63,810 nucleotides of DNA from Haliotis rufescens (GCF_023055435.1 NW_025963797.1:558001-621810), one strand, 5' to 3'; counted from the first letter of the stretch, positions 15,935-47,284 are shown. Translations and numbers: made by a program. The notes: generated by a model from the sequence alone, not told the origin.

Positions 15935-16593
15935 TACATACGCATACACACCCACTCACACAAACTCTCACACACATACACACCCACTCACAAACATATT
16001 CTCACACACAGAAACAAACACACGCACCCACTCACACACATACACACACACACATACTCAAACACTGAGATGAAAACACACTCACTCACACGTACATACA
16101 CATTCACATGCACAAACACACACACACACACATACTCAAACACAGAGAAAAAAACACCCAACCACTGATACACACATGCACACACATACTCACACACAGG
16201 GAAAAAACACACACACACTTATACACACTCACAGACACACACACATACACTAATACTCACACACAGAGAAAAATAAAACACTCACACACACATACACACA
16301 CATACTCAAACACAGATAAAAAAACATACACACACTCACATCTACACACAGACGCACACACACTCTCATGCACACTCTCACCCATGNNNNNNNNNNNNNN
16401 NNNNNNNNNNNNNNNNNNNNNNNNNNNNNNNNNNNNNNNNNNNNNNNNNNNNNNNNNNNNNNNNNNNNNNNNNNNNNNNNNNNNNNNNNNNNNNNNNNNN
16501 NNNNNNNNNNNNNNNNNNNNNNNNNNNNNNNNNNNNNNNNNACAGACAGACACACATACACACATACACAAACACTCTCACACACATATATAA

Positions 16594-19718: not shown

Positions 19719-22700
19719 ATGTCCACTCTGGTGGTTGTGCACATTGCCTATCTGATCATGTCTACAGGTAAACATTCTGATATTAGTTAAATAGTGAGGT
19801 GATGTGAAATGGGGTTTAACGTCGCATCCAAGATTATTGCACTTATATAGCGACGTGCATGTACGGGTGTGTGTTTGTGTGACTGCTTATACTATTCCGG
19901 ACTGATGCCGATTATGGTGCTAGCTGACTTAGATGACATGCCACAGTTTAACATAAATACCCCACTCAGACACAGTATACTGACTCCGAGCTGACCAGTT
20001 CTTGTTTTAGTCCCTTAATGCCGAGCGCCAGACAGGGTAACAACAAGTACCATCTTATAACGTCTTTTGGTATGACGCGGCCGGGAATCGAACCTCGGAC
20101 CTTCAGCTCTCCGGGCAGACGCTCTACCACTAGCCCACGGAGGCTGTATTAGTTAAATAGTTAAAAATCATACCTCTTTGAGACTTGTTCTAACTATGCT
20201 ATTTTTTTGTGTTTATATATAGTTTTTAAAACAGTGAACATATCCAGGCCAGCTATATATGTGTTGTCCTTCTAGGGTTGACTTGGTAGAGATTCAGATC
20301 CTTGGTACCTGTCTTAATTTTCTGATGTATTCTTTGTATGATTTCCAGCTGCCATTTGCAGTGAAGACCAACACTGCCGAGACTGTGACAGCGACACTGG
20401 CAGTTGTCTGACCGAGTGTGACAGTGGTTATTTCGACCTGAAATGTAAGACTCCTTGTAACAGCAACTGTAAAAATAAGAAATGTAAATCCTTGAGCGGT
20501 GGCACAGAAGTATGCACAGAAGGTTGTATCCTAGGTTATCAGGGCGAGAGGTGCACCATACCATGTGACAGTCCAGCAGGTAACTGTACAGCTTGTGTTG
20601 GCGGTTGTGATGGAGGATACTGCCAGCTTAGTTCAACCTGTGTATCAGGATGCAGTGGTTCCTACTATGGATCTGACTGTAAACGATGTTCAAGAAGATG
20701 TAAGACGTGCAATGGTTATACAGGGATGTGTGAGGAGTGTTTTCCACAATATTTTGGGACGATTTGCGAGTATTTATGTGAACACTGTAGGGACACGTGT
20801 CAATTCGGATGTCTGCATGGCTGTATACGTGGCTTTTATGGTGCTGCCTGTGAGAAGGAATGCAGTACAAACTGTGGATATAGTCCAGTGATGCTGGACA
20901 ATAGCACTGCAGACACACGACCTGTACTTAATGACACAGTGGAATGCAATCAGTACAGTGGTGATTGTCGTCATGGATGTGTAGATGGCTGGTTTGGGCC
21001 ACAGTGCTCCTCATGTTGTAATATTAACTGTAGGAATGGGAGATGCAACGATGCAGGCGACTGTGTAGATGGGTGTGTAGATGGCTGGTTTGGGCCACAC
21101 TGCTCCTCACAGTGTAATGTTAACTGTAGGAATGGGAGATGCAAAGATACAGGCGACTGTGTAGATGGGTGTGCATCTCATCATTTTGGAAGAAACTGTA
21201 TACCATGCCCTGACAACTGTATCAACCACACATGTCATACAAGCCATGGAACTTGTGTTCATGGATGTACTAGTGGATTCTATGGACAATCGTGTAACAA
21301 CACGTGTGAATTCTGCCTTGATGGAGAGTGTGACCAGATGACAGGAATGTGTTTCAAAGGCTGCAACACTACCGGACACAAATGCACACCTATCTGCAGG
21401 AACAACTGCACTGTGGACGACTGCCAATCATGTCAGGGTGAGTGAATATCAAGGGAAAGCACATCGATGTGCATCATAACTGAAATTCAAATGATGATTC
21501 ATAGTATGTAGATTATTGGCAATGCATCATGTTTTGCGGTTATGCCACTCAGATCAAGGTCGTTTATATTTCCTTTTGTAAATGAACCCCCTACATGGTC
21601 TAGTGGTAGAGTGTCCGCCCAGAGAGTGGTAGGTCCGGACTTCCATTCCTGGACGCGTCGTACCAAAAGGCGATAAAAAAGATGGAACCTCTTTAACGTT
21701 AAGGGGTGCTACCTATTTCCATGAAACTGCCATTTTCTGCCTATACATTTAAAACAAAATATATTTGTGTATCTGTCATAGTCTCGATACTTACAATTGT
21801 AATACTATATTATGAAACACATTGCACAGACAAGATTTAAAACCATCATTGTCAAATATTGGCTTTCCAGATGAGAATGGGATGAACACGGCATTCGGAC
21901 TGTGGACTGGGCTTACAGCTGTGGTCATTGTGATTGTGATGCTAGCATGCCTGTGTTCCATCAAACGTTGGAGAACTAAAAGGTACCTACATCAAAAGTA
22001 GATAGTGCCATATCTCTTGCAATAGCTGGCTAATGATTCGCAATTATCTTTACTGTAATTCAGACAAAACCTGACACTTATTGAAATGTACTCTTCACAC
22101 TTGAATCAATATGCCAGTTCACTCAATTTTGTGAAGGCACTTCGCAGCTTCTGTTGCCATCTAATATTCCTCTTTATTATTCAGAGCTCAACAATCGGCA
22201 ACTGTTCAACCCAATGACGAAGGCGTTCAGGGTGATATATATTATGTAGAATACCAGGCTATCAACAATTATTGGCAGATCAGAGATGAAGATATAGGCA
22301 CATCCTGTGTGCCACCAGCTATGAAGCAAGAGGAACGTGGGCAAATACTCTCCATGCCAGTGTTGGCAGAATGTTTTTCTACAACAGGTGGTGGAACATA
22401 CAGTGATGCTTCCGAGAGTTCTGTTGGAGACACACAGTCCTACACTCATATATCACAGGATGTTGCAGGCAGTGGTGCAACCCAGAGTTCTGTTGGAGAC
22501 ACACAGTCATACACTCATATATCACAGGATGTTGCAGGCAGTGGTGCAACCCAGAGTTCTGCTGGAGACACACAGTCCTACACTCATATATCACAGGATG
22601 TTACAGGCAGTGGTGTAATCCAGCGTTCTGCCGGAGAGAACCAGCCCTCCACTCATATATCACAGGATGTTTCAGACGGCGAATCATCCCAGAGTTCTGC

Positions 22701-23139
22701 TGGAGACACACAGTCCTACACTCATATATCACAGGATGTTGCAGACAGTGGTGCAACCCAGCGTTCTGCCGGAGATAACCAGCCCTCCACTCATATATCA
22801 CAGGATGTTGCAGGCAGTGGTGCAACCCAGCGTTCTGCCGGAGATATCCAGCCCTCCACTTATATATCACAGGATGTTGCAGACAGTGGTGCAACCCAGC
22901 GTTCTGCCGGAGATAACCAGTCCTCCACTCATATGCCACAGAATGTTTCAGACGGCGAATCATCCCAGAGTTCTGCCGGAGATGTCCGTTCCTACACGCA
23001 TATGTCACGGGCCATGGCAGATTCTGATTCGTCCCACAGTTCTGCAAGTGATGCTCAGGCCTACACCCGACTCTTGCGTGATGTTTTTGTTAATGATCCC
23101 AAGACAGTTGTGAGCTATATATCACCCGTTCATAAATAA
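19719..23139 (+). CDS. EGF-like repeat single-pass receptor 1 (MEGF10/SREC-like), 734 aa; join(19719-19767,20349-21437,21871-21982,22185-23139)
   Basis: All introns GT-AG with compatible phases (1,1,2). Signal peptide MSTLVVVHIAYLIMST, Cys-rich EGF/laminin-EGF-like modules, TM GLWTGLTAVVIVIVMLACLC followed by KRWR, and an open Ser/Thr-rich tail with Tyr motifs. Confidence 0.85.
19796..20146 (-). mobile_element. tRNA-derived SINE family C (Meta/RUDI-like core) with 15-bp TSD, in intron 1 of receptor 1
   Basis: TSD TATTAGTTAAATAGT at 19781-19795 and 20147-20161. A/B boxes and (CACCT)n-like tail. Confidence 0.85.
22417..23080 (+). repeat. Coding 69-bp (23-aa) tandem repeat, ~10 units, in the receptor 1 cytoplasmic tail
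   Basis: Unit (V/A)GDTQSYTHISQDVAGSGATQSS, in frame with the TM exon. Confidence 0.9.
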
Positions 23140-25680: not shown

Positions 25681-28600
25681 ATGCTGAGGCGAAGCAGAGT
25701 TCTCTATTTCAGTGAGTACATCCTTTCAGCACAAAGGTATGCTTCAGTATGATGCATTGACAACATGAGCAGCAAATTAATGACTCGGTTACCGCGAAAT
25801 TCGTACAGTAACGTGAAAGAGAAGGTGTAATTCAAGAAAACCAAATGACCAATTATGAATATGGTCCATAGAACCATCACCTAACTATGACAAAACATTC
25901 AACAGTAAATATTATAACTGTATCACCCTGTACTATAAATACCGACATGGCAATAAATATGGTCGATATTCTGTTATTTAAGATTTGCAGTAAATATTTT
26001 ACATTCAATAAAATGAAAACACAAGCTTGTGTTATTTATCACAGTCGTTTTAGTATATGAAGCCACGTTTAAATTTATAGCAACATACACAATACATGTG
26101 CATAAACAATTTGTTGTAAGGATGCGATAAGAACAAACATTAATCAATGGCACGGTCAGTGATAGATGCACGAAGTGGTTATCTGAATGTAAGCATATAT
26201 ATCTGAATAATTACACAACGTTTGCACGTTTACACAGTGTCACTACTTGATGTGCGTTTCTTCTGGGTTTCTTCCTTTCTTTCATTCATCTTTATTTTGT
26301 CACATTTTCAGCATTTCTGATTCATGCAGTCGCAGCATGCGAGTTTGGCAAATATGGGGATAATTGTGACAAACGCTGCTCCAAAAACTGCCAAGGTAAC
26401 CTACAGAGGAACCTCACACACTGTAACAAGGGAACTGGAGAGTGCTCCGATGGCTGCATCACTGGATGGTATGCTACTCAATGTGACCAAGACTGCGGCA
26501 AGAACTGTCTGGACAACGTCTGCAATCATGGGAATGGACGGTGCACAAGGGTATGCAGTGGAAACCAAATAGGGGATTTCTGTGAGATCCCTGAAAGTGT
26601 GGGATGCTAACCGGTTTCACATTGTTACTTCAGTTGAGGGATGGCACAATAGAAATCCTGATTGTCATGCAATGATTCCTCAGTGCAAACAATTGTTGGG
26701 CATTGCATTTTGCAAAAATAAGATGTAAATTCAAAAACACCCGTCGTATTAGAAATATGTTTTTGGTTTAATTTTCTCTCTAAAGTCACAATTATTTATT
26801 ATCTCATTTGTTTTTGTTTTTGTTTTTGTATAACGCCTCACTCCGCAATACTCCTACCGTATTAGGTCTTATCACACATTTGATCCCAAATGGATGTGGT
26901 ATATTCCTTAATGAGTACTCATTTCAGTGCATCAATACACAATCAGTTTGTATTATGTAACAAAAACAAAAGTTTAACAGTGGTTTTAATGTTACATATT
27001 TGTTAACCACTAGTACATATCATCTACCTATTTAAACGAACACATACATTAAGTAACATATTCATAATTTTACATATATTTTTACCTCACAAAACTTTGT
27101 AACAACATTGGAATTTGGCATTAAGAACATACTACAAGTAACACCTCCATTTATCATAGAAACGATATAAAAAAGATGACTCAATTGAACAGTTGTCCAT
27201 AGGCAATGTTTATTTCGACAGACATCAAGGTCAAAACAGATGAAACAACAGAACAGTCAACGGCACACGTCGCAGTGATCATTACAATCTCCCTTGTGGC
27301 AATTAGTGTTATCATCGCCGTAACCGTCGTCATAACATGTCGACGCCAGGGAGACAACAGGTAAGTTAAACAACATTTCATATAATCTTTTTGAAAGCGT
27401 GACTTGCATTTCTAAGATTCTTTCTGTGTACTCTTACACAAAGCCTACATGGTTTAAAAGAAGATGACTCTTTAATAGAACTGAGACAAGGGTGTAAAAA
27501 TAGAAATGCAAGTTATGTTTTTGTTGCAGTGAAAAGACTAGTCATGATGAAATGTTATTGTTACTGTCGAGAATGGTGACGGTGGGTTCTAATACATGTA
27601 CTCAGTTCTAATACATTTTGCAAAACAGGTTATCATTTAGAATTACCCCGTACTCGATGCCAGAAGTGAAAATCTGAACAACGCCATACGTATGACAACA
27701 ATTGTTCCTTAGTAAAGTGGACATGAATGACATCTTGCCAGCGATGTCTAATTGCTGTTCTTGTTTTTTTTCTCCTAAAGAGCTGTTCCCATAATAGGTT
27801 TAACTTTACATCTCTTACAATAAACGTCTGAATAACCTCAATGTCACGAGATGGTAAAACAATTCGAGTTTGTGGAAAGGTGGATGGGACAGTCGTGATT
27901 CCTTACAATAAACTTACTGCTTGTGACCTTTACATCAGTGGACGTATAGTGTACTTGTTACCCACTTGGTGACCATGATTGTGTCTATCAAATTACTCTC
28001 AGAACTAATGATAGGTTCTTATTAATTGCAGAAGAAAGTCAACCAGGAGGCCAAAAGGTATTGTAGCAAATTGCATTAGAGGGTTAGATATCTTCACACA
28101 TTGTAACTGCCACTGGGTAATTGACCCTGGGAAACACCACCATTCTGATTCCAAGCTCCGCATCCCGCCCTCTGGGAAACTGATCCCAAAACCTTTCGCA
28201 AACACAAGGCATCAGCACTATTTGAAATTGACTCAGAAATATATTAGTAGTTGGACTCGTACGGTGGCCTGCTTTAAGTGAGCCTGTTTTAGTAGGATAT
28301 TATGCTTGTGGGTTGTTGTGTGTCTTTGGTCGATTTTGTTCACGATGGCAACAGTAGGCCTAAACTTACATCTAGCACATACATGTATATTTACAACTCT
28401 AGAACTGTACTCAGTATGTCATTGTCCCACAATGATGGATGGAGGCTGGTTTTATGCAACACAACAACAATCATAGTTAGCAGGATGCATTTCTGTTATC
28501 TCCTTGAGTGGCTGATGTACAGAGTAGGGTCGGGTTGGCGGTTGATGATAGTTGTATCTCTTCGTTCCTCGTTGTAACCTACTACTGTCATAAGGTCCGG

Positions 28601-29470
28601 GTTATAATTAGTCCTCAGCAACACATGTTTGTCGTAACGGTGATCAGCATCGCTGCCTTAGAAGGTGCATACCGTCGTTCCTCATTTGCAGAGATATATG
28701 CTCATGTTGTCAGTCACTAGATTGTCTGTTCCAGTCTCAATTATGTACATACCAACATCATATAGCCCCGTGGAAAACCATCGTCCTTAGAGTCAGTCAC
28801 TTCTTAAAAAAAACATTGACAAAGACCATCACACATAAATCATGAATATCTGTCCGAATCAATATATTAACACGTTTACTTAATGCAAAAACACTATGAT
28901 CCAGTTGAATTGATCCTATTGACATATCTCTATGTTTCATAATTGGGACGTCACCAAATTTGACCTTTCAGTAAAAAATACCGGAATGGTACTCTGTGTC
29001 ACTGTTTACAGGCTGACGTCGCATGGCAGGGGTATTGCTGTGTTGCGTCAGGAAATACAAACAATTTATATGAATGACGGGTTCTACCGGTAGAGCAGGA
29101 CATCCAAACCCTTTTTGCGAACATCTGGTGTCATCACTGATTTTCAGTTGTCCATTCACACAATTTCATCTGTTATTTGCCCTTTAAACCAAATTGAATC
29201 TGTTTTTGCAGAAAATCTAGGTGGATTATTCTCTACCATTGTCAATTTATGTTATATTGATAAGCTTACCCACTGAATCAGCACCATCTGGAAACCATTT
29301 TTAATTCTACTGAATAACCAAAAAAAGTTAAGTTAAATCTAAAAATGTATTTTTAATTAACTTCCTAATAATATGGTCGCACGCTATGCCCTTATGTGAT
29401 TTTTCTTTTTTTCTTTTTTTTCCAGCTGGTACTGACCCTGAAAATCCTGAAGGCGTGCCTTTACTGCCAA
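25681..29470 (+). CDS. Receptor 2, N-terminal exons: signal peptide + EGF-like + TM + linker; join(25681-25711,26312-26596,27222-27360,[27781-27797],29426-29470)
   Basis: MLRRSRVLYFT|FLIHAVAA signal, then CEFGKYGDNCDKRCSKNC...CSDGCITGWYATQCDQDC. TM VAVIITISLVAISVIIAVTVVITC-RR. Linker exon GTDPENPEGVPLLP. The 17-nt micro-exon is tentative. Confidence 0.7.
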
Positions 29471-29625
29471 GTAGGTAACCATAACAACGTATTGATGTTG
29501 TAACAATGACGTTGTATATATTCTTACATATTCCGTAACATTGTGAAAATAAACTAACACCAATAGAAATTTACTTGACTTTCACCTTGTCAATGCCTAA
29601 TGCCTTAAGCACTGTAGTTGTATTG

Positions 29626-29797
29626 AGAGTGAGTGAGTGAGTGAGTGTGGTTTTATGCCGTTTTAGCAATATTCAAGGAATATCACGGAGAGGGACACCA
29701 GAAATAGGCTTCACACATTGTATCCATGTCGGGAATCGAGCCCAGGTCTTCGGCCTGACGAGCGAACGCTTTAACCACTAGGCTACCCCACCGCCCC
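29626..29797 (-). mobile_element. SINE family A
   Basis: Same head and tail as 3403-3568. Confidence 0.85.
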
Positions 29798-32785
29798 GTA
29801 GGTGTAGAGACGTAGATGATGATGACGGTATATGTGTCATACGTTCTGTAGCAGCAGCTAGGGTCACACAAAACATGTTACTTGTGAACTCGTGTGTACA
29901 CTTATGATTTGGTGGTTGCTTATTCTCGCCTACATTCAAGGACACTTTAAGAATGGGCAGGATGATGCCAGTGTGTCAACTTATTAGTTAGGCTGGCATC
30001 AATCAGAAGTATATGTGTATTGTTTTGAGGGATAAACTTGATCAATGTTGCTTGAGGTGGATACATCTGAGTATGTGAGACTGAAGGAGAATACTAACTG
30101 TTAAAGTTCTTTGTGGTTTATCTGAATCTTTATTCAATGGTCATGCCTTTTTTCCAAAGAGAAGGCATAATGATAAACCAGAAGTGCTAATACCTCTGTT
30201 CTTGAGGTTGATATAGGAATTGAACTTTCGTAAATTACATTACATTGGGCAAACACTTTCAAAGCTTAAAGGGATGTCATTAAGTCGTGAATGCTGAGAA
30301 ATTTGGCATCGTGTTTGCGGCATGCACATATTTTCCTTTTTATAAAATGTACTGCAATGGACATGTACATATTCAAAGCAATATAATGTTACAAAACCGG
30401 GAATGTTTATACCTTGTGTTTAGGATGGCTATTGGTGAAGTCATCTTCCTCCGCACTTGGTAAAGTGAAACGGTTCATAAAACATGGTTCAGTTGGGAAT
30501 GTTTTCGCAATTGAGGATAGTTCGATGGCAAAATGTGCTTGAATAAATCTGATCTTAAATTACACTAACAGACAGAGCACAATCAGTATCCAAGGCATCT
30601 GGCCAAAAACGCAAACGTATGCTTTCATAGCCTCAAATTTATCTAGGACCATCTAAATCGTTTGAACATTAAATGATTTTCTAGCCACAGGTTTTGGGGA
30701 ACTTTTGATAAAAACAGAGCGTTCATCAAACGTAAAAAAACATGCAAAACCAAAAGCTTAGCATGGTCCTCACAGGGGTGGGGGGTCGTGGGTCCAGTGT
30801 CAATTGTTGATGTAAAGTTGTAACATTTCATACTTTAAATACGTATTTGATAATAAAGCGGGAGTTCATATAAATATCTCCCTTTACACTGAGTGAGGAC
30901 TTGTATTGCGAGTAGTATTGACATTTATGAAGTGTTCAGGGATAGGTGCCAAATTTGGGAGAGACAGTCATGAACTCTTTGTTTGAAATACTCAAAAACA
31001 ATTTGATATCACCAATCTCTTGACCTATTTATGTAACATATGATGTTTAAATGCTCAGAAATAAAGTAAACCTTTCATCACTGGTTATATGACCAAGGTT
31101 TTGATTCAATCAATTGATTGATAATAATGCTTTGGTAGCCTGTACTGCTAAACATAATTGTATATTTTGACCATGAGAGTTTGGGAGTGCAACAAAGTGC
31201 TAAGATATGTCTAGTTATTCACAGTTTCTATGTGTTCTCCTTTAAAATATAATTTTTCATAATGTCTAAATAGTCTGCCCCTTCTTGTTTCAAGATCGAT
31301 ATTCATTCCTGTAGCATAACATAATTCTTCAACACAAGTTATTTCTTTCTTAAGTTTTTGTTTAATAAAATGTTATATATACATGTATGTAATTCGCTAA
31401 AATTCGAATAATTATATTACCATAGTGATATACTTATGTTGTGCAGTAGTGTGGTGTGGTTTGGCGTATACTGTATGTGTTGTTTTACGCTTATTCTTGT
31501 TGCCATTGAAATGTGAATTCCAACGGTACTATATAAAACATCGAAGCAAAAATGTGATAAAACCAATGTACCGTTTCAGATGAGATTTGACATGAATCAT
31601 GTTCTAATTTGTTTTCTTCAGGATATAATGTGCTTTCCCACATTAATAATCAAAGGAAAGATGAGTATATATATATATGTCATGGATAGAGGTAGGCTTC
31701 ATATTTGACGGACGTTCAATACGTTTTGCAAGTTGCAAAACTTATTGAACTTATTGAACGCCCCTCGTGGAAATCAGTGACAACACAAGGTGTTCGGGAG
31801 AAGGTGAGCACGTCCTTGCCCTACCGGTAGTACCCTCGTATTCACACAATTTGCGTCAAAATGTTGGTATTTATTGCGTGACGCCGCACAGCATTACTCC
31901 TGTCTTGGACGGCCAAAAAGGACCCCAAAACAAGGCGCGTCTCCCTTAGCGCTCACATCGACAGATACTCAGAAAGATTGGGAATTCGATATCTTAAATA
32001 GTCAGTTTTTGTTCTTTAAAATGAATGCAGCTGACGCTATGTAGAGTAAATCGTAAAGCTAATGACGAAAATAATTAGTGCAACCTTGTGTCTACCATTA
32101 AGGAGGTAAAGCAATGTGTATGATTAATATTGGTATGTATTGTGTTATTGTTAATGTTACCAGTGTCATTGCAACGCGCTAACGTGACGCAATGACAGTG
32201 TTGTGCATATGACATATATGTGTTGTAATATAAACGGTATCTAACGGGTACGAATGAAGTAATTTATTTGTAACTCATTTAAACTTTACATATTCTCTAA
32301 GTTGTTAAAATGTGGCGTATGATTACAACATTAGTAGCTGATGATTCGAGCATAGAATGTTCTTTCAAAGTGCCCCCTGGAAATAAAGTGCGCATCTTCC
32401 TCCAATATTGATTAGAAGAAATATTCGATGCCGATTCTAAAATCGTGTCGAAATAGCATTTAAATACACAGACATCACCGAGTTACAGTTGTATCAAACG
32501 GAAATTCAGCTTCACACTCTGTTCAGCGAAGGTGAGCCGTGAAGGAAACCCGCGAGACGATTTACGTTGACTGTGTGATTTCATAGGAACCAGCATATTG
32601 TTTATCTGTTATACAATTAGTGGTAATTACTGTCTTCTATGCTTCTATGCCTCTCTGTTGTTGTGTGAAAAACAGTAGTGTCGATCGGGAGTAGATTATT
32701 CACCTATGGGTTGAGTGGACCTTGCAGATTATGATTACTTTGTCTATCTGTTTTGTTTTCTGAATGTCTCCATGTTGTCTTCCAG

Positions 32786-35700
32786 GTATGCTGGAGTGGG
32801 AGATTCAGAAGACAGAAGAATTATTTGAAGAGACTGCTATCTACCATAAAGTCAAGGAACGTTTAGGGAACTTTAGACATGTGACAATATCTGGTGCTTC
32901 AGGGGACGGAAAGACGTCAATGGCGCTGATGTTGGGGTCAGAATACCAGAAGAAAGGGTATGAACTATATTTTGTCCACAACATTTCAGAATTCGAGTTA
33001 TGTAGTGAAATACAAGGTAAATTTCTGTGTTTCATATTTGATGACATATTTGGAACAGTAGAAATATCAACCGATTGACCTCACCTCAGACGGATTTTAG
33101 ATATTCTCAACTCTTACTTTGAGCAGGTGGCATCTAACTTTTCTAAATCATTCCAATCTAATGGAAAACTTGACTCTCATTCAAATCACAGAGAAAAAGA
33201 CATGGGAAACGTTCGTGTCATATTTACCACAAAATCATACAATCTTGACCTGGGAAAAATACACTTGGGAGAAAATGAGTGTGTGTTTTTCAAAGGAGAT
33301 TCAGTCATTGACCTTACACGGTCTGAGAGTCGCTACACAGTCGAAGAAAAGAAACAGATGTTTATAAAACATAAAACTTATAACAGTAACAGTAGTTATT
33401 TTGATTTAGACAAAATGTGTGGCATTAAGGATCAACTGTTTTGCTTCCCGCTCACATGCAAACTGTTCTTCAGTTTTCCAAAATCACATGATCAATATGA
33501 AGATTTTTTTTTAAGACGCCTCTCAGGGCAGAACTGGAATCTCTGCTAAAAAAAGGTGAATAACAAGTCATCAGCACTGATCCTTATGTTGCTTTGTGAA
33601 GGTAACCTGAACCTTTGCCATTTGGAATCAGGCAGCCAAACGCTTGAGAAACATCTCTCCACAGTCTCAAGTGTAGTTAGTGGTGTTGACAGTGCAGAGA
33701 TTATCAGTTGCGTGAAGGGATTTTTCGGTACATTTTTTACCAAAGCAGACATCACCATTATTTCACACCCAGCAATCTATGATGCCTGTGCCTTTGTCTA
33801 TTGCAAAATCAATTGTGCTTTTGTATTACGACACTGCAGCATACAATTCCTGTACGAACGTGTTCAGGCCCAAACAGTACCTGCATGCGAGACTGATGAG
33901 GATAGGCATGTGATCTATGTATCAGATGCCTACAATGACATCATTGCTTCAAGACTGGCAGGGGCTGTGAGGGAGGGGGACTATCGGATGTCTATCATGC
34001 ACCCTATATTGGAAAGACATGATATAGTGGATAAGGTCCTTGCTGCAGTCAAACCCTTCCTGACTTCAGTGACATATGAACATGGTAACAACGTATTTCA
34101 TTATGCCTGTTATTCGGGAAATGTGTACATTGTACGTAAACTCCTTCCTTTTTGTGACATCAACAGTTAAGGAAGCTGGTTGGACGCCAGTAATGATAGC
34201 TGTGATGCTGGGGCCGGAGGGTGTCTTTCACATTATTGTGTCAGAGGGAGCTGACATCACACTGGCCGATAAAGAGAACAATAGCTGTCTTCACCTGGCA
34301 TGCATACGCATACATAGGTCATTAGTAGAATACCTACTGCAAAATAATGACATAAACATCAGAGGAAAAATGGGATGGACACCACTGATGACTGCAGCTT
34401 TGATTGGAAGGAAAGATGTGTTTGACTTGTGTCAAAGGGTCAAAGGGAGCTGACATCACACTGACTGATGACGACAATAACAACATTCTTCATCTGGCAT
34501 GTCAGGGAGGAAATAAGCCCTTAGTAGAATTTCTACTGCCAAAGACTGACATAAACATAAGAGGAAATATGGGACACAGACCACTAATGAATGCAGCTTC
34601 GAGAGGACAGAAAAATGTGTTTGACTTCCTTGTGTCAAAGGGAGTTGACATCACAATGACTGATGACGACAATAACAACATTCTTCATCTGGCATGTCGG
34701 GGAGGAAATAACCCCTTAGTAGAATATCTACTGAAAAACACTGACATAAACATAAGAGGAAGTATGGGACGGACACCACTAATGAAGGCAGCTTGGAGTG
34801 GAAAGAAAGATGTGTTTGACTTCCTTATGTCAAAGGGAGCTGACATCACATTGACAGATGACGATAATAACAACATTCTTCATCAGGCATGCGAAGGAGG
34901 AAATAAGCCGTTAGTAGAATATCTACTGACAAAGACTGACATAAACATAAGAGGAGAAATGGGACAGTCACCACTAATGACTGCAGCTTTGAGTGGAGGA
35001 AAGATGTGTTTGACTTCCTTGTGTCAAAGGGAGCTGACATCACACTGACTGATGACGACAATAACAGCATTCTTCATCTGGCATGTTTGGGAGGAAATAA
35101 GCCGTTAGTAGAATATGTACTGACAAAGAATGACATAAACATAAGAGGAAAATGGGACAGACACCACTAATGAATGCAGCTTGGAGTGGAAAGAAAAATG
35201 TGTTTGACTTCCTTGTGTCAAAGGGAGCTGACATCACACTGACTGATGACGGCAATGACAACATTCTTCACCTTGCCTGCAAAGGTGGAAATAAAGCCTT
35301 AGTAGAACATCTACTGCCAATGTGTGACATCAACTGTCGGGGGCACAAGGGTTGGACACCAGTAATGAAAGGAGCCTCCAGTGGGAATAAGGATACATTT
35401 GATCTCCTCCTGTTAAATGGAGCTAACCCATCACTCTCTGGTGATGACAATGATACTTTACTCCATGCAGCCAGTAGAGGTGGAAACATTGACATTGTTA
35501 GACATGTTACTGGTGACTTTGACATCAACACACGAGGAGAGAATGATGCTAGCTGTGTGTGGAGGTCACACTGATGTAGTTGACTTCCTGGTGGACCATG
35601 GTGCTGACGTCAACCTGGTGGACAATGATGGAGATAGTCTCCTCCATTTGGCTTGTGAGTCAGGAAACTTGAAGATGGTTAAGCATGTCATGTCCTATTC

Positions 35701-36275
35701 TGATAGATAACTTTGGTTGGACACCGTTGGCAATGGCAGCTGTGGAGGGAAACTATGCTGTTTTTCAATATCTTAAAGGCCTAGGAGCAGATGTGACACT
35801 GGCAGACAGGGCAGAAGATGGTGTGTATACTCTGGCCCTCCAGGGAGGATGCAGGGGGATCATCAAGGAGTTAGGACGAGAGGAACATTCAGGGAAAAGC
35901 ATCACACCATGGAATGAATTGATGAAGTCACTAGTGACATCACAAGTGGACTACCTAAAGACATATTCACAACTAAGTCCTGACCTTGTTCAGAAAGATC
36001 AATTTGGAGATAGCTTACTACATCTGGCCTGTCGAGGAGGGAACAGACAGTGTGTGGAGTATCTGCTCCCATCCTATGACATCAATGTCCGAGGTCGCTA
36101 TGACTGGACACCGGTGATGATGGCAGCTGTGTGTGGCCATGGAGATGTCTTCCAGTTGCTGGTGTCTCACAAGGCGGATCTGTCTCTAGTCTCAAGTACA
36201 GGGGAAGATATCACCTCCCTGGCTCGTCGTGGCAACAACGACGACATTGTCAAGTACCGATTGGATAAGTCTTGA
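32786..36275 (+). pseudogene. Large terminal exon: nSTAND3-like P-loop NTPase + helical region + ~20 ankyrin repeats; disrupted; probable C-terminal exon of receptor 2
   Basis: Phase-1 acceptor TCTTCCAG at 32785. Walker A ISGASGDGKT, Walker B FIFDDIFG, then CFPLTCKLF and SHPAIYD motifs. Ankyrin consensus GxTPLMxAA..G..LLLxxGAD. Lesions: TGA 33076 and frameshifts near 33510, 33550, 34168, 34430, 34998, 35150, 35543, 35705. Confidence 0.85.
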
Positions 36276-42875: not shown

Positions 42876-44746
42876 ATGGCACCGACGACAATTCTGAGCG
42901 TAGCGTGCATAATGGTTTACACTCGTGGTAAAGACATTATGAATATTTCCAATATGATAGATTTTATTATTTCAAGTTTCTCGATTTCTGACATGTTATT
43001 CATTTATATCTGTAACATGCGCTGTTCTATAGATAACATCACTTCTCCTTGTATCATGCTCAGCTGTAGTAATAAAACTGAGGATGTCATATCGTCAATC
43101 GCAAGGGCCAGTTTTAATTATTTAACATATTAAATCCACACATTGCATGCTTATAGTTTATTGGCTTTTTTGCAGAAAAAATGTTTTGGTAATATACATT
43201 TTTACCATCATTTTCAGCTGCCAAATGTAAAGGACACCAACACTGTTCAGACTGTGATAGCACCACAGGGTATTGCATCTCTGAATGTGATCCTGGATAT
43301 CGCAACGAAAATTGTCGAAACAAGAAATGCAAACTGTCAATAAATGGCAATGATAATTGCACTGAGGGTTTTGTCCCGGGATACCAAGGCCTGGGGTGTA
43401 GTCGGCCATGTTACAACCCAGGAGATGTTTGTACGGCATGCCCAGGTGGGTGTGATGCAGGATATTGTCAGGTGGGCTCCTCCTGTGTGTCTGGGTGTGT
43501 GGACTCCTACTATGGGTCTGGCTGCAAGACATGTCACAGAGGATGTAAGACATGCAGCAGAATAACAGGAACATGCAGGCAGTGTCATCCTTCATTTCGT
43601 GGTCTGAAATGTGAACAGGAGACGAACACTACCAGAGGTTGTGAAGGTGGTTGTGTACCTGGACATATAGATAGAGACTGCAAACATTGTTCTGACAAAT
43701 GTCTCAATAAGACCTGTCACCCTAAGAACGAACACTTTGATACACAATGTAATCCAGGATTTTATTGTGAACACTGCGACAAGACATGTGGTGTGTGTAT
43801 TGATGGAGACTGTGATCAGATGTCAGGGATGTACTTCAGAGGGTGTAACAGGACCACACATGGATGTGAACCTTCCTGTAGAGCCAACTGCACTTTAGCT
43901 GAATGTGACATTGAGACATGTCCACAAGGTAATGCATTGTACGCAAGGTGAATATCTAACCAGATTTTCTTTCTAATATATAAAAAATAGAGGTGGGAGC
44001 AAGCTTCCCTTTACACATGCCAAATTTAGTTCAGGCACAAGGCTTTTGCTGTCCCTGTTCTGGGTTGATCTACATGAACGGACTGGAATCACCCATCTAT
44101 GTTGTACTTGAGCAGGTTAGACTTGAGCGTATGAACCACTGATAACGTGTCTGCCCGAATTTAACACTTTCAGCAGCTGCAGTTGATGTCAACACAAAGT
44201 TAACAAAGGACATATTCAAAATGAGCATTTATTGGTTCTTGTTCTGTTTGTATGTAGATGAAGAGAAGAGTTATGAGCGGGATATCCATCAGTCCATCAA
44301 CATGGGGCTGTTGACAGTGATGTGCCTCTTTGTGTTCTGCATCCTGATCACCGTTTGCGTCTGCTATTGCCGAATTATGGCCTCACAACGGTAGGGTTTC
44401 ATTCTTTCATTCATTCATTCATTCATTTATTCATTCATTCATTCATTCATTCATTCATTCATTCATTCATTCATTCATTCATTCCACTTGACTAAGTGTA
44501 ATTATTCAATAATATGGGAAGTCATTTAAACCGTCCATCCATATAAGTGTACGTAGTATAAACTTATCATTTGACATCAATATATGTGGCGTTTGGGCAG
44601 TTTGTAGAGAGATTCCAGGCGAGGAGGCAGTTGACTACCGAGATGAAGCAACCAGAGAGAGGCTAGCATCGATGTTTATAAGATCACAGCATACATACTG
44701 TGACGTAGACGAGAGTGACATGGGGCCAGTGATCGTCTTCCTGTAG
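42876..44746 (+). CDS. EGF-like repeat single-pass receptor 3, 344 aa; join(42876-42927,43218-43928,44258-44390,44608-44746)
   Basis: GT-AG introns, phases 1,1,2. Signal MAPTTILSVACIMVYT. EGF exon paralogous to receptor 1 but with lost Cys and in-frame deletions. TM MGLLTVMCLFVFCILITVCVCYC. Tail ends HTYCDVDESDMGPVIVFL*. Confidence 0.75.
44400..44484. repeat. (TTCA)n microsatellite
   Basis: Direct reading. Confidence 0.95.
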
Positions 44747-46090
44747 ATGTTGACAGGGACACAGAGTAGAGACTGTGGTGTAGACGAGAGTGACATGGGG
44801 CCAGTGATAGTCTTCCTGTATATGTTGACAGGGACACAGAGTAGACACTGTGGTATAGACGAGAGTGACATGGGGCCAGTGATAGTCTTCCTGTAGATGT
44901 TGACAGGGACACAGAGTAGAGACTGTGATGTGGACGAGAATGCAAGGGGCCAGTGATTGTCCTGTAGATCTTTACAGGGACACAGAGTAGACACTGTGAT
45001 ATAGACGAGAGTGACATGGGGCCAATGATTGTCTTGCTGTAGATGTTGACAGGGACACATAGTAGAGACTGTGATGTAGACGAGAGTGACATTGGGCCAG
45101 TGATTGTCGTCCTGTAGATGTTGACAGGGACACAGAGTAGAGACTGTGATGTGGACGAGAGTGACATGGGGCCAGTGATAGTCTTCCTGTAGATGTTGAC
45201 AGGGACACAGAGTAGAGACTGTGACGTAGACGAGAGCGACATGGGGCCAGTGATTGTCTTCCTGTAGATGTTGACAGGGACACAGAGTAGAGACTGTGAT
45301 GAAGACGAGAGTGACATTGGGCCAGTGATTGTCGTCCTGTAGATGTTGACAGGGACACAGAGTAGAGAGTGTGATGTAGACGAGAGTGACATGGGGCCAG
45401 TGATCGTCATTCTGTAGATGTTGACAGGGACACAGAGTAGAGACTGTGATGTAGACGAGAGTGACATGGGGCCGGTGATCGTCATTCTGTACATGTTGAC
45501 AGGGACACAGAGTAGAGACTGTGATGTAAATGAGAGCGACATGGGGCCAGTGATTGTCTTCCTGTAGATGTTGACAGGGACACAGAGTAGAGACTGTGAT
45601 GTAGACGAGAGTGACATGGGGTCGGCTATTGTCTTCCTGTATATGTTTACAGGGACACAGAGTAGACACTGTGATGTAGACGAGAGTGACATGGGGCCAG
45701 TGATTGTCTTCCTGTAGATGTTGACAGGGACACAGAATAGAGACTGTGATGGAGACGGGAGTGACATGGGGCCAGTGATTGTCTTCCTGTAGATGTTAAA
45801 AGAGACACAGAGTAGAGACTGTGATGTAGACGAGAGTGACATTGGGCCAGTGATCGTCTTCCTTCAGATCTTGACAGGGACACAGAGTAGAGACACTGGC
45901 GTAGACAAGAGTGACATGGGGCCAGTGATCGTCCTCCTGTAGATGTTGACAGGGACACAGAGTAGACACTGTGGCGTAGACGAGAATGACATGGGGTCAG
46001 TGATTGTCTTCCTGTAGATCTTGACAGGGACACAACTTAGTCGCTGGGGTGTAGACGAGAGTGACATGGGGGCAGTGATAGCCTCCATGT
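44699..46090. repeat. 75-bp minisatellite (~18 units) derived from the 3' end of receptor 3
   Basis: Unit TGTGACGTAGACGAGAGTGACATGGGGCCAGTGATCGTCTTCCTGTAGATGTTGACAGGGACACAGAGTAGAGAC. The first unit contains the stop codon of the gene. Confidence 0.9.
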
Positions 46091-46094
46091 AAAC

Positions 46095-46325
46095 GTGAGG
46101 TGAGGTGAGATGGAATCGGGTTTGACATCGCGTTCAAGGTTATTGCAGTTATTTCGCGATGGGAAAGCAAATGTGTGCGTGTGCTTGCTTGAAGATGTTT
46201 GTAATAGACCAGACCAACGTAGTCCTTGTTGTAGCCCCTGTACGCCAAGCGGCGGCAAAGGAAACTGCAAGTGGGCGGTCAATCTCCGGGCAGACGCTAT
46301 AACCACCAGACCATAAAAACGGCTC
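46095..46325 (-). mobile_element. Truncated/rearranged SINE family C at the end of the 75-bp array
   Basis: (GTGAG)n tail, GACATCGCGTTCAAGGTTATTGCAG, and head remnant TCTCCGGGCAGACGCT. Confidence 0.55.
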
Positions 46326-47284
46326 TCCCTGTATAGGTTGGTGAGGACACAGCACAGGAACTACAGTGTAGACTAAAGTGTACACAAGACACGTGACATG
46401 GAGCCAAGTGACAGTCTTCCTGTAGAAGTTAATAAGGACACAGCAGAAGCAATATGCGGAAACCACGTGACATGGAGCCAGTGACAGTTCTCTAGTACAG
46501 GCGCCTCCCCAAGGATAATGATATTTGTCACTGCCAGTCTTATTTCATATATTTTAAACGGTTTTCTCCACTTTAATTTCACTATCAACTCAACCGTCAT
46601 CATATCATATTATTTTATTTTCATGACTCTGCGTTTGCTTCTAGAAATAAAACACAATTCACAAACAAGTATTGTTTTCGTTTCCATGACAACAGAAATG
46701 CATGTTAACACACATTACATGAATCTATAGCTGACGAATGTTCTCACCGTCTCTGTTATTCTTTGAACATATTACAGTTGAATATCATTCCTCTTCTTTC
46801 ACTGCATTAATTAGGAATGAAAAACCGCGACAGAAACTATTGTTGATGTAAAGAGAGATTTTCAGCTGTCCGGGTCATACTTGAGAGTACGTTTCGTAAT
46901 GTTATAAATAGAGTGAAGAAATCTATAACTGTTGTCACTGCAACAATCAGGAATAACAACCAATGATAGACAATACATTTGCTGCACGTAGAGTTGACAG
47001 TTTACAAGGTTGCATTAGAAATAGATGTGCAGTGTCATATGTACATGTAAAGTAAACTGTTCTAACATAAAACAAACGTAATTTGTTCTTCGACAGATAA
47101 AAATACAACAAATGCATATAATAGTCTGGACACACACACTCTAAATAGTCATCAACCCATTCTCAAATGTAATATTATGTTTCATGGGTGCAATCGGAAT
47201 ATTTATATCCAAGTAGCATGTCGTGTTTGCATATAAAGGTACACTGTATGAAATGTGTGTGTTAAAGTGTCAGACACAAATGTG

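What the first reader, a model, noticed from the sequence alone, without database searches (positions are those of the whole stretch)
25681..36275. Putative transmembrane NLR-like receptor: signal peptide - EGF - TM - nSTAND3 NTPase - ankyrin array
Seen: the EGF/TM exons have no short terminal exon that I could find. A phase-consistent path 25681-25711, 26312-26596, 27222-27360, 27781-27797, 29426-29470, 32786 onward joins them in frame to an exon with Walker A GASGDGKT, Walker B FIFDDIFG and about 20 ankyrin repeats (~1,330 aa if repaired). The NTPase exon opens at a phase-1 acceptor. The linker has an [DE]xxxLL sorting signal (EGVPLL). Known: STAND NTPases with C-terminal repeat sensors are normally cytosolic (NLRs, Apaf-1, bacterial antiviral STANDs) with an N-terminal effector. 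Inference: here a cell-surface EGF receptor occupies the effector position, coupling extracellular binding to NTPase oligomerisation or tethering an intracellular sensor to the membrane or endosome. The ORF track does not show this architecture. I cannot verify how novel it is without a search.
Basis: partly seen in the sequence, partly recalled or inferred. Interest (0 to 1): 0.9.

Follow-up and report, generated by a model that had tools for sequence, protein, structure and literature searches.

The report
Dead copy of abalone membrane-anchored STAND receptor
This red-abalone locus is a decayed duplicate of a real, abalone-specific gene family that joins a small EGF-like cell-surface domain and a membrane anchor to an NLR-like NTPase with an ankyrin array.

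Summary
The window is Haliotis rufescens contig C19:558001-621810.

**Observation.** Exons at 25681-25711, 26312-26596, 27222-27360 and 29426-29470, and the phase-1 acceptor at 32786, are colinear with intact annotated abalone proteins (P0246, P0248, P0249, P0250, P0096). These proteins read signal peptide, 14-Cys EGF-like module, stalk, TM helix, short linker, nSTAND3 NTPase, ankyrin array.

**Corrections.**
The conserved micro-exon is 28032-28057.
- An optional exon at 31622-31691 was missed.

**This copy is a pseudogene.** It carries two nonsense codons (33076, 34168) and at least nine frameshifting indels. Over 100 paralogues in the same assembly keep open frames of 1000-3300 aa.

**Family.**
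- 34 of 79 Haliotis nSTAND3-ankyrin proteins examined, drawn from four species, carry the EGF-TM head.
- No non-Haliotis protein with this fusion was found.
- 32 of those 34 have a [DE]xxxL[LIM] motif in the linker.

**Precedents.** Sea-cucumber AjNLRC4 (Ig-TM-NACHT), an oyster family (Cys-rich ectodomain-TM-DED-TRADD-N-STAND) and anthozoan NLRs with TM domains.

RNA evidence could not be obtained. Verdict: a new variant of a known kind, of moderate interest.

The parts
25681..25711 (+). Exon 1: start codon and the first part of the signal peptide (MLRRSRVLYF).
   Evidence: GT donor. Matches the N-terminus of P0246, MLRTSTVLYFT.
26312..26596 (+). Exon 2: end of the signal peptide plus the 14-cysteine double EGF-like ectodomain module.
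   Evidence: Open frame with canonical sites. 81-84% identical to P0096 and P0248. All 14 Cys are invariant in 27 paralogous exons. The AF2 model (pLDDT 75.6) has SCARF1, laminin LE, Tie2 and Notch-ligand EGF tandems as its best, weak, Foldseek matches.
27222..27360 (+). Exon 3: Thr/Ser/Glu-rich stalk, TM helix (about 27263-27340) and a basic stop-transfer sequence (CRRQGDN).
   Evidence: 79% identical to P0248. In the intact relatives' homologous segment the mean 19-residue Kyte-Doolittle hydrophobicity is above 3 in all but P0249 (2.5). Coordinates.
27781..27797 (+). Not supported.
   Evidence: It has plausible splice sites, but no homologue in P0246, P0248, P0249, P0250 or P0096.
28032..28057 (+). 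Exon 4 (revised): a 26-nt juxtamembrane micro-exon encoding RKSTRRPK.
   Evidence: 100% identical to P0248 residues 159-167. Acceptor tgcag| and donor |gtattg. Keeps phase from exon 3 into exon 5.
29426..29470 (+). Exon 5: cytosolic linker carrying the acidic dileucine-type motif EGVPLL.
   Evidence: 80-87% identical to P0246, P0248 and P0250. [DE]xxxL[LIM] is present in the linker of 32 of 34 family members, against 10% of shuffled linkers.
31622..31691 (+). Exon 6 (optional): YNVLSHINNQRKDEY..., broken by an (AT)n expansion (70 nt against 66) that gives an in-frame TAG.
   Evidence: 93% identical to P0246 residues 179-193, followed by a frame change. The exon is absent from P0096 and P0244, whose exon 5 joins the large exon directly.
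32786..36275 (+). Exon 7: nSTAND3 NTPase, helical/winged-helix arm and about 20 ankyrin repeats, ending at the homologous stop codon. Disrupted by 2 nonsense codons and at least 8 frameshifting indels.
   Evidence: Pfam nSTAND3 and Ank matches. Colinear with P0249 residues 211-1645 across seven frame segments. The C-terminus is 83% identical to P0249 and P0006.
32893..32916 (+). Walker A, GASGDGKT.
33031..33045 (+). Walker B, FIFDD.
33076..33078 (+). Nonsense codon TGA. Intact relatives and the sister copy have Ser (TCA) here.
33514..33557 (+). A 7-bp deletion and a 1-bp insertion bracket an out-of-frame stretch containing TAA (33547-33549).
   Evidence: Alignment to the intact paralogues L003 and L004. 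Three-frame translation.
34168..34175 (+). Nonsense TAA (GAA in the sister copy) followed by a 2-bp deletion.
34433..34436 (+). A 4-bp insertion causing a frameshift.
35000..35702 (+). Four further frame switches inside the ankyrin array, near 35000, 35153, 35543 and 35702.
   Evidence: Three-frame translation. Colinear chain of tblastn matches to P0249.

Best explanation
The locus is an unprocessed pseudogene: a decayed tandem or segmental duplicate.

It belongs to a Haliotis-specific gene family that encodes type I membrane proteins with this layout:
- a signal peptide;
- one ~90-aa double EGF-like (SCARF/MEGF-type) cysteine module;
- a Thr/Ser-rich stalk;
- a single TM helix followed by a basic stop-transfer sequence;
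- a 35-85-aa cytosolic linker with an acidic dileucine-type motif;
- an nSTAND3 P-loop NTPase with a STAND-type helical arm;
- an array of 20 to more than 60 ankyrin repeats.

Shown here: the seven-exon structure, the domain content, the membership of the window copy in a clade whose intact members all have this layout, and the lesions that inactivate this copy.

Inferred for intact members:
- The EGF-like head faces the outside, or the lumen of endosomes and phagosomes.
- The dileucine-type motif directs clathrin-adaptor-dependent internalisation.
- The NTPase acts as an NTP-dependent oligomerisation switch, as in other STAND proteins.
- The variable ankyrin array binds cytosolic ligands or partners.

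My preferred working model is a membrane-tethered NLR-like sensor. Clustering of ectodomains on a particle or cell surface and NTP-driven oligomerisation reinforce each other at the plasma or phagosomal membrane, as reported for the sea-cucumber Ig-TM-NACHT receptor that controls Vibrio phagocytosis.

The window copy could at most yield a truncated protein ending at 33076, if exon 6 is skipped.
For: **Exon layout.** P0001 maps onto its own locus as signal-peptide exon, EGF exon, stalk+TM exon, micro-exons and one giant NTPase+ANK exon. This is the same layout as in the window.

**Colinearity.** Window exons 1-7 are colinear with P0246, P0248, P0249, P0250 and P0096.

**Phylogeny.** In an NTPase tree of 80 rows the window groups with P0249 (SH-aLRT 97, 90% identity over 410 columns), inside a fully supported clade of four proteins that all carry EGF+TM.

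**Frequency of the head.** 34 of 79 Haliotis nSTAND3-ANK proteins carry the 14-Cys module plus TM upstream of Walker A.

**Genomic pairing.** In the own genome, 28 nSTAND3 exons have an EGF-module exon within 30 kb upstream on the same strand. I paired these by hand.

**Lesions.** None of them is shared with the 91-96% identical sister copy at C19:166580-177024, which has lesions of its own. More than 100 paralogues in the same assembly have open frames of 1000-3300 aa.

**STAND fold.** The AF2 model of the closest intact paralogue (pLDDT 77.9) best matches MalT (Z 13.4, 310 residues aligned). Foldseek lists Avs5, SAMD9, NLRP3 and the Dark apoptosome.

**Selection.** Both modules are under purifying selection in paralogues: median dN/dS 0.35 for the EGF exon and 0.31 for the NTPase.

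**Dileucine-type motif.** Present in 32 of 34 linkers, against 10% of shuffled linkers.
Against: - No RNA evidence.
- The intact family models are automatic RefSeq predictions. I could not see their transcript support.
- Two subfamily models (P0006, P0247) start at a Met inside exon 6 and have no EGF or TM. A cytosolic isoform from an internal promoter is therefore possible.
- The EGF assignment rests on the cysteine pattern and on weak fold matches (best E 0.01).
- The signal peptide and topology were judged by eye and by hydrophobicity only.
- The function of the dileucine-type motif, the oligomerisation and any ligand are inference.
Confidence: 0.85

Rival explanations
1. The gene is intact, and the stops and frameshifts are assembly or sequencing errors.
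For: C19 is a small (847 kb) unplaced contig rich in near-identical paralogues, a setting where collapsed or chimeric assembly can occur.
Against: - More than 100 paralogous exons in the same assembly, several on the same contig, have uninterrupted frames of 1000-3300 aa.
- The lesions include two base substitutions that create stops (TCA to TGA, GAA to TAA) and indels of 7, 4 and 2 bp that do not look like simple base-run slips in the flanks I read (shown for the 2-bp and 4-bp ones).
- At least 11 lesions lie within 3.6 kb.
- The sister copy is independently decayed.
Confidence: 0.03
2. At this locus there are, or were, two transcription units: a short EGF-TM receptor gene, and a separate cytosolic nSTAND3-ankyrin gene starting at exon 6 or 7.
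For: - RefSeq models P0006 and P0247 from the same subfamily begin at MDEYPGVMERG (exon 6) with no TM.
- About half of all Haliotis nSTAND3-ANK proteins are cytosolic.
- Many short receptors with the same Cys module exist, and the window holds other copies of the module at 20831-21190, 43478-43771 and 53760-53948.
Against: - Seven of nine intact subfamily members join the two parts, with every micro-exon and splice phase conserved, including the window's nearest relatives.
- P0006 sits on a 29-kb contig, which could hide its 5' exons.
- For P0247 the matching EGF exon lies 29 kb upstream on the same strand.
Confidence: 0.07
3. The decayed copy is still expressed. It makes a truncated membrane protein (EGF-like head, TM, linker and the first ~96 residues of the NTPase, ending at 33076) that acts as a decoy or regulator of intact paralogues.
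For: - Exons 1-5 are intact, with canonical splice sites and an open frame.
- If exon 6 is skipped, as in P0096 and P0244, the first stop lies in the last exon, where nonsense-mediated decay is not expected (established rule).
- The 5' part is better conserved with the sister copy (95.7%) than the 3' part (91%).
Against: - No expression data.
- The 95.7% identity applies to introns as well as exons, so it more likely reflects gene conversion or a more recent exchange than selection.
- The EGF exon of the sister copy has its own stop codon.
- dN/dS of the window EGF exon against its relatives is about 0.75-1.15.
Confidence: 0.1

Closest known systems
Sea-cucumber AjNLRC4 (Apostichopus japonicus), as described in PMC13133943.
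   Same: A single protein with an extracellular binding domain, a TM segment and an intracellular STAND-type NTPase. It is membrane-localised and linked to phagocytosis of a pathogen.
   Different: Its ectodomain is Ig rather than EGF-like, and its NTPase is NACHT rather than nSTAND3. The source describes no ankyrin array. It comes from another phylum and has no detectable sequence relationship to this family.
Crassostrea virginica lineage-specific expansion: Cys-rich ectodomain, TM, DED, TRADD-N and a variable C-terminus that can include STAND NTPases and ankyrins (Kaur et al. 2021, PMC8195603).
   Same: A molluscan, lineage-specifically expanded, receptor-like architecture. A cysteine-rich extracellular domain and TM helix lie ahead of cytosolic immune or apoptosis modules, which can include a STAND NTPase and ankyrin repeats.
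   Different: The abalone proteins have only a 35-85-aa linker with no Pfam domain between the TM and the NTPase. They have no DED and no TRADD-N. I did not test whether the two ectodomains are related.
Anthozoan NLRs with 3-5 N-terminal transmembrane domains (PMC5094078).
   Same: Membrane-bound NLR-like proteins in a marine invertebrate, forming one clade.
   Different: They have multi-pass N-terminal TM bundles with no folded ectodomain, and a NACHT NTPase.
Bacterial Avs5 (SIR2-nSTAND3-repeat antiphage STAND; bioRxiv 10.1101/2025.07.08.663546; PDB 9jap).
   Same: The same Pfam NTPase family (nSTAND3, PF20720), followed by a helical-repeat sensor. It is among the best Foldseek matches of the paralogue model (E 5.6e-5).
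   Different: Avs5 is cytosolic. Its N-terminal effector is an enzymatic SIR2 domain, and its repeats are TPR, Sel1 or PPR rather than ankyrin.
SCARF1 (SREC-I) / MEGF10-type EGF-like scavenger-receptor ectodomains.
   Same: Tandem EGF-like modules rich in cysteine, with a G-x-[YW]-G-x-x-C signature. SCARF1 (8hna) is the top Foldseek match of the ectodomain model. The same abalone module is repeated 6-25 times in the ectodomains of receptor tyrosine phosphatases.
   Different: The match is weak (E 0.01, TM-score 0.37). No Pfam EGF model fires. Only one double module is present, and no ligand is known.
TANC1/2 and ANKRD50 (animal P-loop NTPase plus ankyrin scaffold proteins).
   Same: An NTPase followed by a winged-helix domain and an ankyrin array. 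These are among the nearest named clusters by language-model features, with scores of 0.84.
   Different: They are cytosolic scaffolds with no TM or ectodomain. A score below 0.9 is only a lead, and I did not test homology.

Membership tests
STAND NTPase, nSTAND3 clade (Pfam PF20720) | Match to the nSTAND3 profile above the curated cut-off. | tested here: met
   The window piece 32788-33075 scores 62.4 bits against a cut-off of 27.2. Intact relative P0096 scores 84.1 bits over profile positions 1-152 of 155.
STAND NTPase, nSTAND3 clade (Pfam PF20720) | Walker A GxxxxGK[ST] and Walker B hhhhDD. | tested here: met
   GASGDGKT at 32893-32916 and FIFDD at 33031-33045. Both are invariant in 21 paralogues.
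STAND NTPase, nSTAND3 clade (Pfam PF20720) | A nucleotide-binding domain followed by the STAND-type helical/winged-helix arm. | tested here: met
   Tested on the AF2 model of the closest intact paralogue (L003), not on the window itself. The best VIA match is MalT 8bob_C (Z 13.4, rmsd 5.5, 310 residues aligned across positions 1-454). Generic AAA+ proteins align only about 200 residues. Foldseek lists Avs5, SAMD9, NLRP3 and Dark.
STAND NTPase, nSTAND3 clade (Pfam PF20720) | A C-terminal array of superstructure-forming repeats. | tested here: met
   Ank, Ank_2 and Ank_4 matches with E down to 1e-41 between 34150 and 36272.
STAND NTPase, nSTAND3 clade (Pfam PF20720) | An intact coding sequence, as required for a functional member. 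| tested here: not met
   Two nonsense codons and at least nine frameshifting indels.
STAND NTPase, nSTAND3 clade (Pfam PF20720) | NTP-dependent oligomerisation. | not testable with these tools
   Needs biochemistry on an intact paralogue.
Canonical animal NLR (NACHT-LRR) | A NACHT domain (PF05729). | tested here: not met
   No NACHT match in the window pieces, P0001, P0006 or P0096. nSTAND3 matches instead.
Canonical animal NLR (NACHT-LRR) | A leucine-rich-repeat sensor. | tested here: not met
   The repeats are ankyrin.
EGF-like domain (SCARF/MEGF type) | Match to a curated EGF profile or to a solved EGF sequence. | tested here: not met
   No Pfam family at E up to 5, and no meaningful PDB sequence hit.
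EGF-like domain (SCARF/MEGF type) | A conserved cysteine framework and an EGF-tandem fold. | tested here: inconclusive
   14 invariant Cys in 27 paralogous exons. In the AF2 model (pLDDT 75.6), nearly all the best Foldseek hits are EGF tandems, including SCARF1, laminin LE, Tie2 and Notch ligands, but the best E is 0.01 and the TM-score 0.37.
Type I single-pass membrane receptor | An N-terminal signal peptide. | not testable with these tools
   No signal-peptide predictor was available. By eye there is a basic n-region (MLRRSR), a hydrophobic core (VLYFTFLIHAVAA) and small residues before the first Cys.
Type I single-pass membrane receptor | One hydrophobic TM helix followed by a basic cytosolic flank. 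| tested here: met
   One hydrophobic stretch of about 26 residues (AHVAVIITISLVAISVIIAVTVVITC) followed by RRQGDNR-RKSTRRPK. Relatives score 2.5-3.8 on a 19-residue Kyte-Doolittle mean.
Oyster receptor-like TRADD-N proteins (PMC8195603) | DED and TRADD-N domains between the TM helix and the C-terminal modules. | tested here: not met
   The linker is 35-85 aa and has no Pfam domain.
AjNLRC4-type transmembrane NLR (PMC13133943) | An Ig ectodomain and a NACHT NTPase. | tested here: not met
   The ectodomain is a Cys-rich EGF-like module and the NTPase is nSTAND3.

The most novel reading that the evidence does not exclude
The intact abalone paralogues form an undescribed class of 'outside-in' STAND receptors. 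In this class a SCARF/MEGF-like ectodomain and a dileucine-routed single-pass anchor replace the N-terminal effector of an nSTAND3-ankyrin NLR-like protein. Binding of a particle, pathogen or non-self cell at the surface or in the phagosome would then directly gate NTP-dependent oligomerisation on the cytosolic face. The fusion would have arisen once in the Haliotis lineage and then expanded to dozens of genes.
Probability: 0.3. Interest if true: 0.7.

Novelty: new variant of a known kind. Interest (0 to 1): 0.4.

Why it matters
STAND/NLR proteins are usually treated as cytosolic sensors. Only a few membrane-bound versions have been reported, in sea cucumber, oyster and anthozoans.

The abalone family adds an independent solution built from different parts: an nSTAND3 NTPase instead of NACHT, an EGF-like head instead of Ig, and no death-fold adaptor. 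Dozens of copies exist in four species, so it offers a natural series for two questions:
- What does a membrane anchor and ectodomain do for a STAND switch?
- How do such receptors diversify and die?

There is also a practical point. These genes are named 'serine/threonine-protein phosphatase 6 regulatory ankyrin repeat subunit-like' in RefSeq. That name hides them from surveys of abalone immune genes, which matter to aquaculture and to conservation of species affected by withering syndrome.

The window locus itself is a dead copy. It matters only as evidence of birth-and-death turnover in the family.

Tried and rejected
**Steps that gave no result**
No statement about transcription is possible.
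Only C43 and C19 paralogue stretches were fetched. The full DNA of the closest intact paralogue (C56) was not read, and lesions in the last 1.7 kb of the ankyrin array are located only by frame switches.
- A sequence search of the Cys module gave nothing usable (Pfam at E up to 5; PDB by phmmer).
- Long ORFs elsewhere in the window gave only low-complexity Pfam noise.

**Analyses that did not settle anything**
- dN/dS comparison of the EGF exon and the NTPase gave medians of 0.35 and 0.31. This is no general sign of positive selection on the ectodomain. A few close pairs exceed 1, but the exon is short.
- A single origin of the EGF-TM fusion is neither shown nor rejected. The two EGF+TM clades are separated by weakly supported branches, and the AU test for one clade gives p 0.39.

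**Limits of the searches**
- For relatives outside Haliotis, the word-indexed searches with the N-terminal 215 residues of P0001 and with the NTPase region of P0096 returned only Haliotis proteins. An exhaustive HMMER search with the EGF exon returned, among its best 150 of 725 hits, only Haliotis representatives with a Walker A motif. The tools hold no other mollusc genomes, so absence elsewhere is not established.

**Handling of the spliced model**
- The joined model was never sent to a database tool. Exons were searched by reference.
- I did translate the joined path to check the frame, and I ran the joined N-terminal peptide through a local tblastn against two paralogue stretches (C43, C19), before I applied the exon-by-exon rule strictly. 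No later step used a joined sequence.

Full report
**1. What the sequence is**

The window is G000:C19:558001-621810 of a 1.33-Gb genome.

**2. Check of the observation**

The large exon beginning at 32786 contains:
- Walker A GASGDGKT and Walker B FIFDD;
- a Pfam nSTAND3 match of 62.4 bits against a cut-off of 27.2;
- ankyrin matches with E down to 1e-41.

The exon is not an open frame. Three-frame translation, alignment to two intact paralogues and to a sister copy, and a colinear chain of matches to P0249 show these lesions:

| Position | Lesion |
|---|---|
| 33076 | TGA (relatives have TCA, Ser) |
| ~33514 and 33557 | 7-bp deletion and 1-bp insertion, enclosing an out-of-frame stretch with TAA at 33547 |
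| 34168 | TAA (GAA in the sister copy) |
| ~34173 | 2-bp deletion |
| ~34433 | 4-bp insertion |
| ~35000, 35153, 35543, 35702 | four more frame switches |

**3. The exon path, tested by homology**

An exhaustive HMMER search with the EGF-like exon found P0096 (H. cracherodii, 1623 aa) at 81% identity at its N-terminus. P0096 has a full nSTAND3 match (E 1e-23) and ankyrins.

A search with its NTPase region recovered the rest of the subfamily. P0246 (H. rufescens LOC124123099), P0248, P0249, P0250, P0245 and P0244 all read signal peptide, 14 Cys, stalk, TM, basic stretch, '...AG[TA]DPENPE[GD]xPLL...', then '..MLEWEIQKTEELFEETAIY..' and Walker A.

Local tblastn of these proteins against the window places each segment:

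| Exon | Coordinates | Note |
|---|---|---|
| 1 | 25681-25711 | |
| 2 | 26312-26596 | |
| 3 | 27222-27360 | |
| 4 | 28032-28057 | micro-exon RKSTRRPK, 100% identical to P0248, acceptor tgcag|, donor |gtattg |
| 5 | 29426-29470 | |
| 6 | 31622-31691 | optional |
| 7 | from 32786 | large exon |

Exon 6 is 66 nt in relatives and 70 nt here, because of an (AT)n expansion. That gives an in-frame TAG. P0096 and P0244 lack exon 6 and join exon 5 directly to the large exon with a Ser codon.

The phase-1 acceptor at 32786 is conserved.

**4. The architecture is a family trait**

- P0001, which is 100% identical to the C43 paralogue, maps onto its locus with the same layout: signal-peptide exon, EGF exon, stalk+TM exon, micro-exons, giant exon.
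- Of 79 Haliotis nSTAND3-ankyrin proteins with a recognisable Walker A, drawn from H. rufescens, H. rubra, H. asinina and H. cracherodii, 34 have the 14-Cys module and a TM helix upstream. 43 have neither.
- In the own genome, more than 130 nSTAND3 exons and more than 150 EGF-module exons were scored. I paired 28 of them by hand as an EGF exon 2.8-29 kb upstream of an nSTAND3 exon on the same strand. This is a lower bound, because only 150 of 1779 EGF candidates were scored.
- In the NTPase tree the window copy is sister to P0249 (SH-aLRT 97, 90% identity over 410 columns), within a fully supported clade of four EGF+TM proteins.
- The EGF+TM proteins fall into two well-supported clades of 31 and 10 rows. 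Holding them together costs 1.45 log-likelihood units (AU p 0.39), so one origin of the fusion is compatible with the data but not shown.

**5. This copy is a pseudogene, not an assembly artefact**

- More than 100 paralogous exons in the same assembly have open frames of 1000-3300 aa.
- The lesions include substitutions and multi-base indels.
- The sister copy at C19:166580-177024 is 95.7% identical over the 5' part and 91% over the NTPase part. It shares none of the window's lesions and has its own: a TGA in the EGF exon, a 1-bp insertion after the Walker B region, and further stops.

Both copies therefore decayed independently after duplication.

**6. The parts**

*Ectodomain.*
- Pfam and PDB sequence searches do not recognise it.
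- 27 paralogous exons share 14 invariant cysteines and the G-x-[YW]-G-x-x-C signature.
- In an AF2 model (pLDDT 75.6) the best Foldseek hits are nearly all EGF tandems, including SCARF1 8hna (E 0.01), laminin LE, Tie2, DLL4, Jagged and Notch. I treat 'EGF-like, SCARF/MEGF type' as likely but not proven.
- The same module is repeated 6-25 times in the ectodomains of receptor-type tyrosine phosphatases (P0098, P0100, P0107, P0119). It also occurs singly on many short receptors, so it is a widely reused ectodomain cassette.

*NTPase.*
- The AF2 model of the closest intact paralogue (pLDDT 77.9) aligns best to MalT, a founding STAND protein (Z 13.4, 310 residues). Generic AAA+ proteins align only over the core of about 200 residues.
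- Foldseek lists Avs5 (itself nSTAND3 by Pfam), SAMD9, NLRP3 and the Dark apoptosome.

*Linker.* It is 35-85 aa with no Pfam domain. 32 of 34 family members carry [DE]xxxL[LIM], at subclade-conserved positions, against 10% of shuffled linkers. Relatedness inflates this contrast.

*Selection.* Both the EGF exon and the NTPase are under purifying selection among paralogues, with median dN/dS of 0.35 and 0.31.

**7. How it most likely works**

Shown here: domain order, one TM helix with a basic cytosolic flank, a conserved NTPase with STAND fold features, and a variable ankyrin array.

Inferred: intact members are type I membrane proteins. Their small EGF-like head faces the outside or the endosomal or phagosomal lumen. 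They cycle by adaptor-dependent endocytosis through the dileucine-type motif. On the cytosolic face they use NTP-dependent oligomerisation as a switch, and the ankyrin array is the ligand- or partner-binding surface.

I favour a membrane-tethered NLR-like sensor or phagocytic receptor, by analogy with sea-cucumber AjNLRC4 (PMC13133943). Two alternatives are not excluded:
- a purely inside-out model, in which cytosolic sensing clusters the TM helices;
- simple tethering of the sensor to the membrane.

The window copy can at most make a truncated product.

**8. Comparison with what is known**

'nSTAND3' occurs in only five papers of the library, none on animals. I found no paper describing this abalone family.

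The concept is not new, however:
- Kaur et al. 2021 describe about 50 C. virginica proteins with a Cys-rich ectodomain, TM, DED, TRADD-N and variable modules that can include STAND NTPases and ankyrins. They propose that these sense adhering pathogens or cells.
- AjNLRC4 is an Ig-TM-NACHT membrane receptor with functional data.
- Anthozoans have NLRs with 3-5 TM domains.

The abalone family differs from all three in its NTPase clade and its ectodomain, and from the oyster family also in lacking death-fold adaptors. RefSeq already holds the models, under misleading 'PP6 regulatory ankyrin repeat subunit-like' names. Language-model neighbours show that nSTAND3-ankyrin clusters are common in Mollusca.

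**9. Limits**

- No other mollusc genomes could be searched.
- Signal peptide and topology were not predicted by a dedicated tool.
- The scan's first-stage notes list other nSTAND3-ankyrin genes elsewhere in this genome. Apart from the family census, I did not test those notes.

**10. Verdict**

I class it as a new variant of a known kind. Interest is 0.4.

Noticed in passing
L032 and L002 (G000:C19:166580-169861 and 173728-177024): A sister copy of the whole gene lies about 415 kb upstream on the same contig. It is 95.7% identical over the 5' exons and introns and 91% over the NTPase exon. It is also a pseudogene, but with entirely different lesions.
   Followed up: partly
window 20831-21190, 43478-43771 and 53760-53948 (+): Further copies of the same Cys-rich EGF-like module lie on the + strand. 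The window therefore sits in a cluster of EGF-module receptor genes. First-stage notes mention a YxxI-rich tail at 22185-23139 and a minisatellite at 44608-46500.
   Followed up: no
P0098, P0100, P0107, P0119 (database proteins): The same ~90-aa Cys module is repeated 11-22 times (6-25 across the hit list) in the ectodomains of receptor-type tyrosine phosphatases that have two PTP domains. It looks like a widely shuffled ectodomain cassette.
   Followed up: partly
L034 and L003 (G000:C56:303348-303629 and 237321-237608, minus strand): The closest intact H. rufescens paralogue (P0246, LOC124123099) has its EGF exon and its NTPase exon about 66 kb apart. Introns in this family can therefore be very long.
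   Followed up: partly
P0006 (contig C373) and P0247 (C19:141466): Two RefSeq models of the same subfamily start at a Met inside exon 6 (MDEYPGVMERG) and lack the EGF-TM head. They are either truncated models or a cytosolic isoform from an internal promoter.
   Followed up: no
G000:C46:3193282-3463899 and 1600167-1613006: A separate cluster where EGF-module exons lie 10-13 kb upstream of nSTAND3 exons with short open frames (about 390-430 aa). This may be a truncated or differently built subfamily.
   Followed up: no
window 31665-31680: An (AT)n microsatellite lies inside coding exon 6. It is the cause of that exon's frameshift.
   Followed up: yes
window 16387-16541: A run of 155 N (an assembly gap or masked stretch). 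I left it untouched.
   Followed up: no
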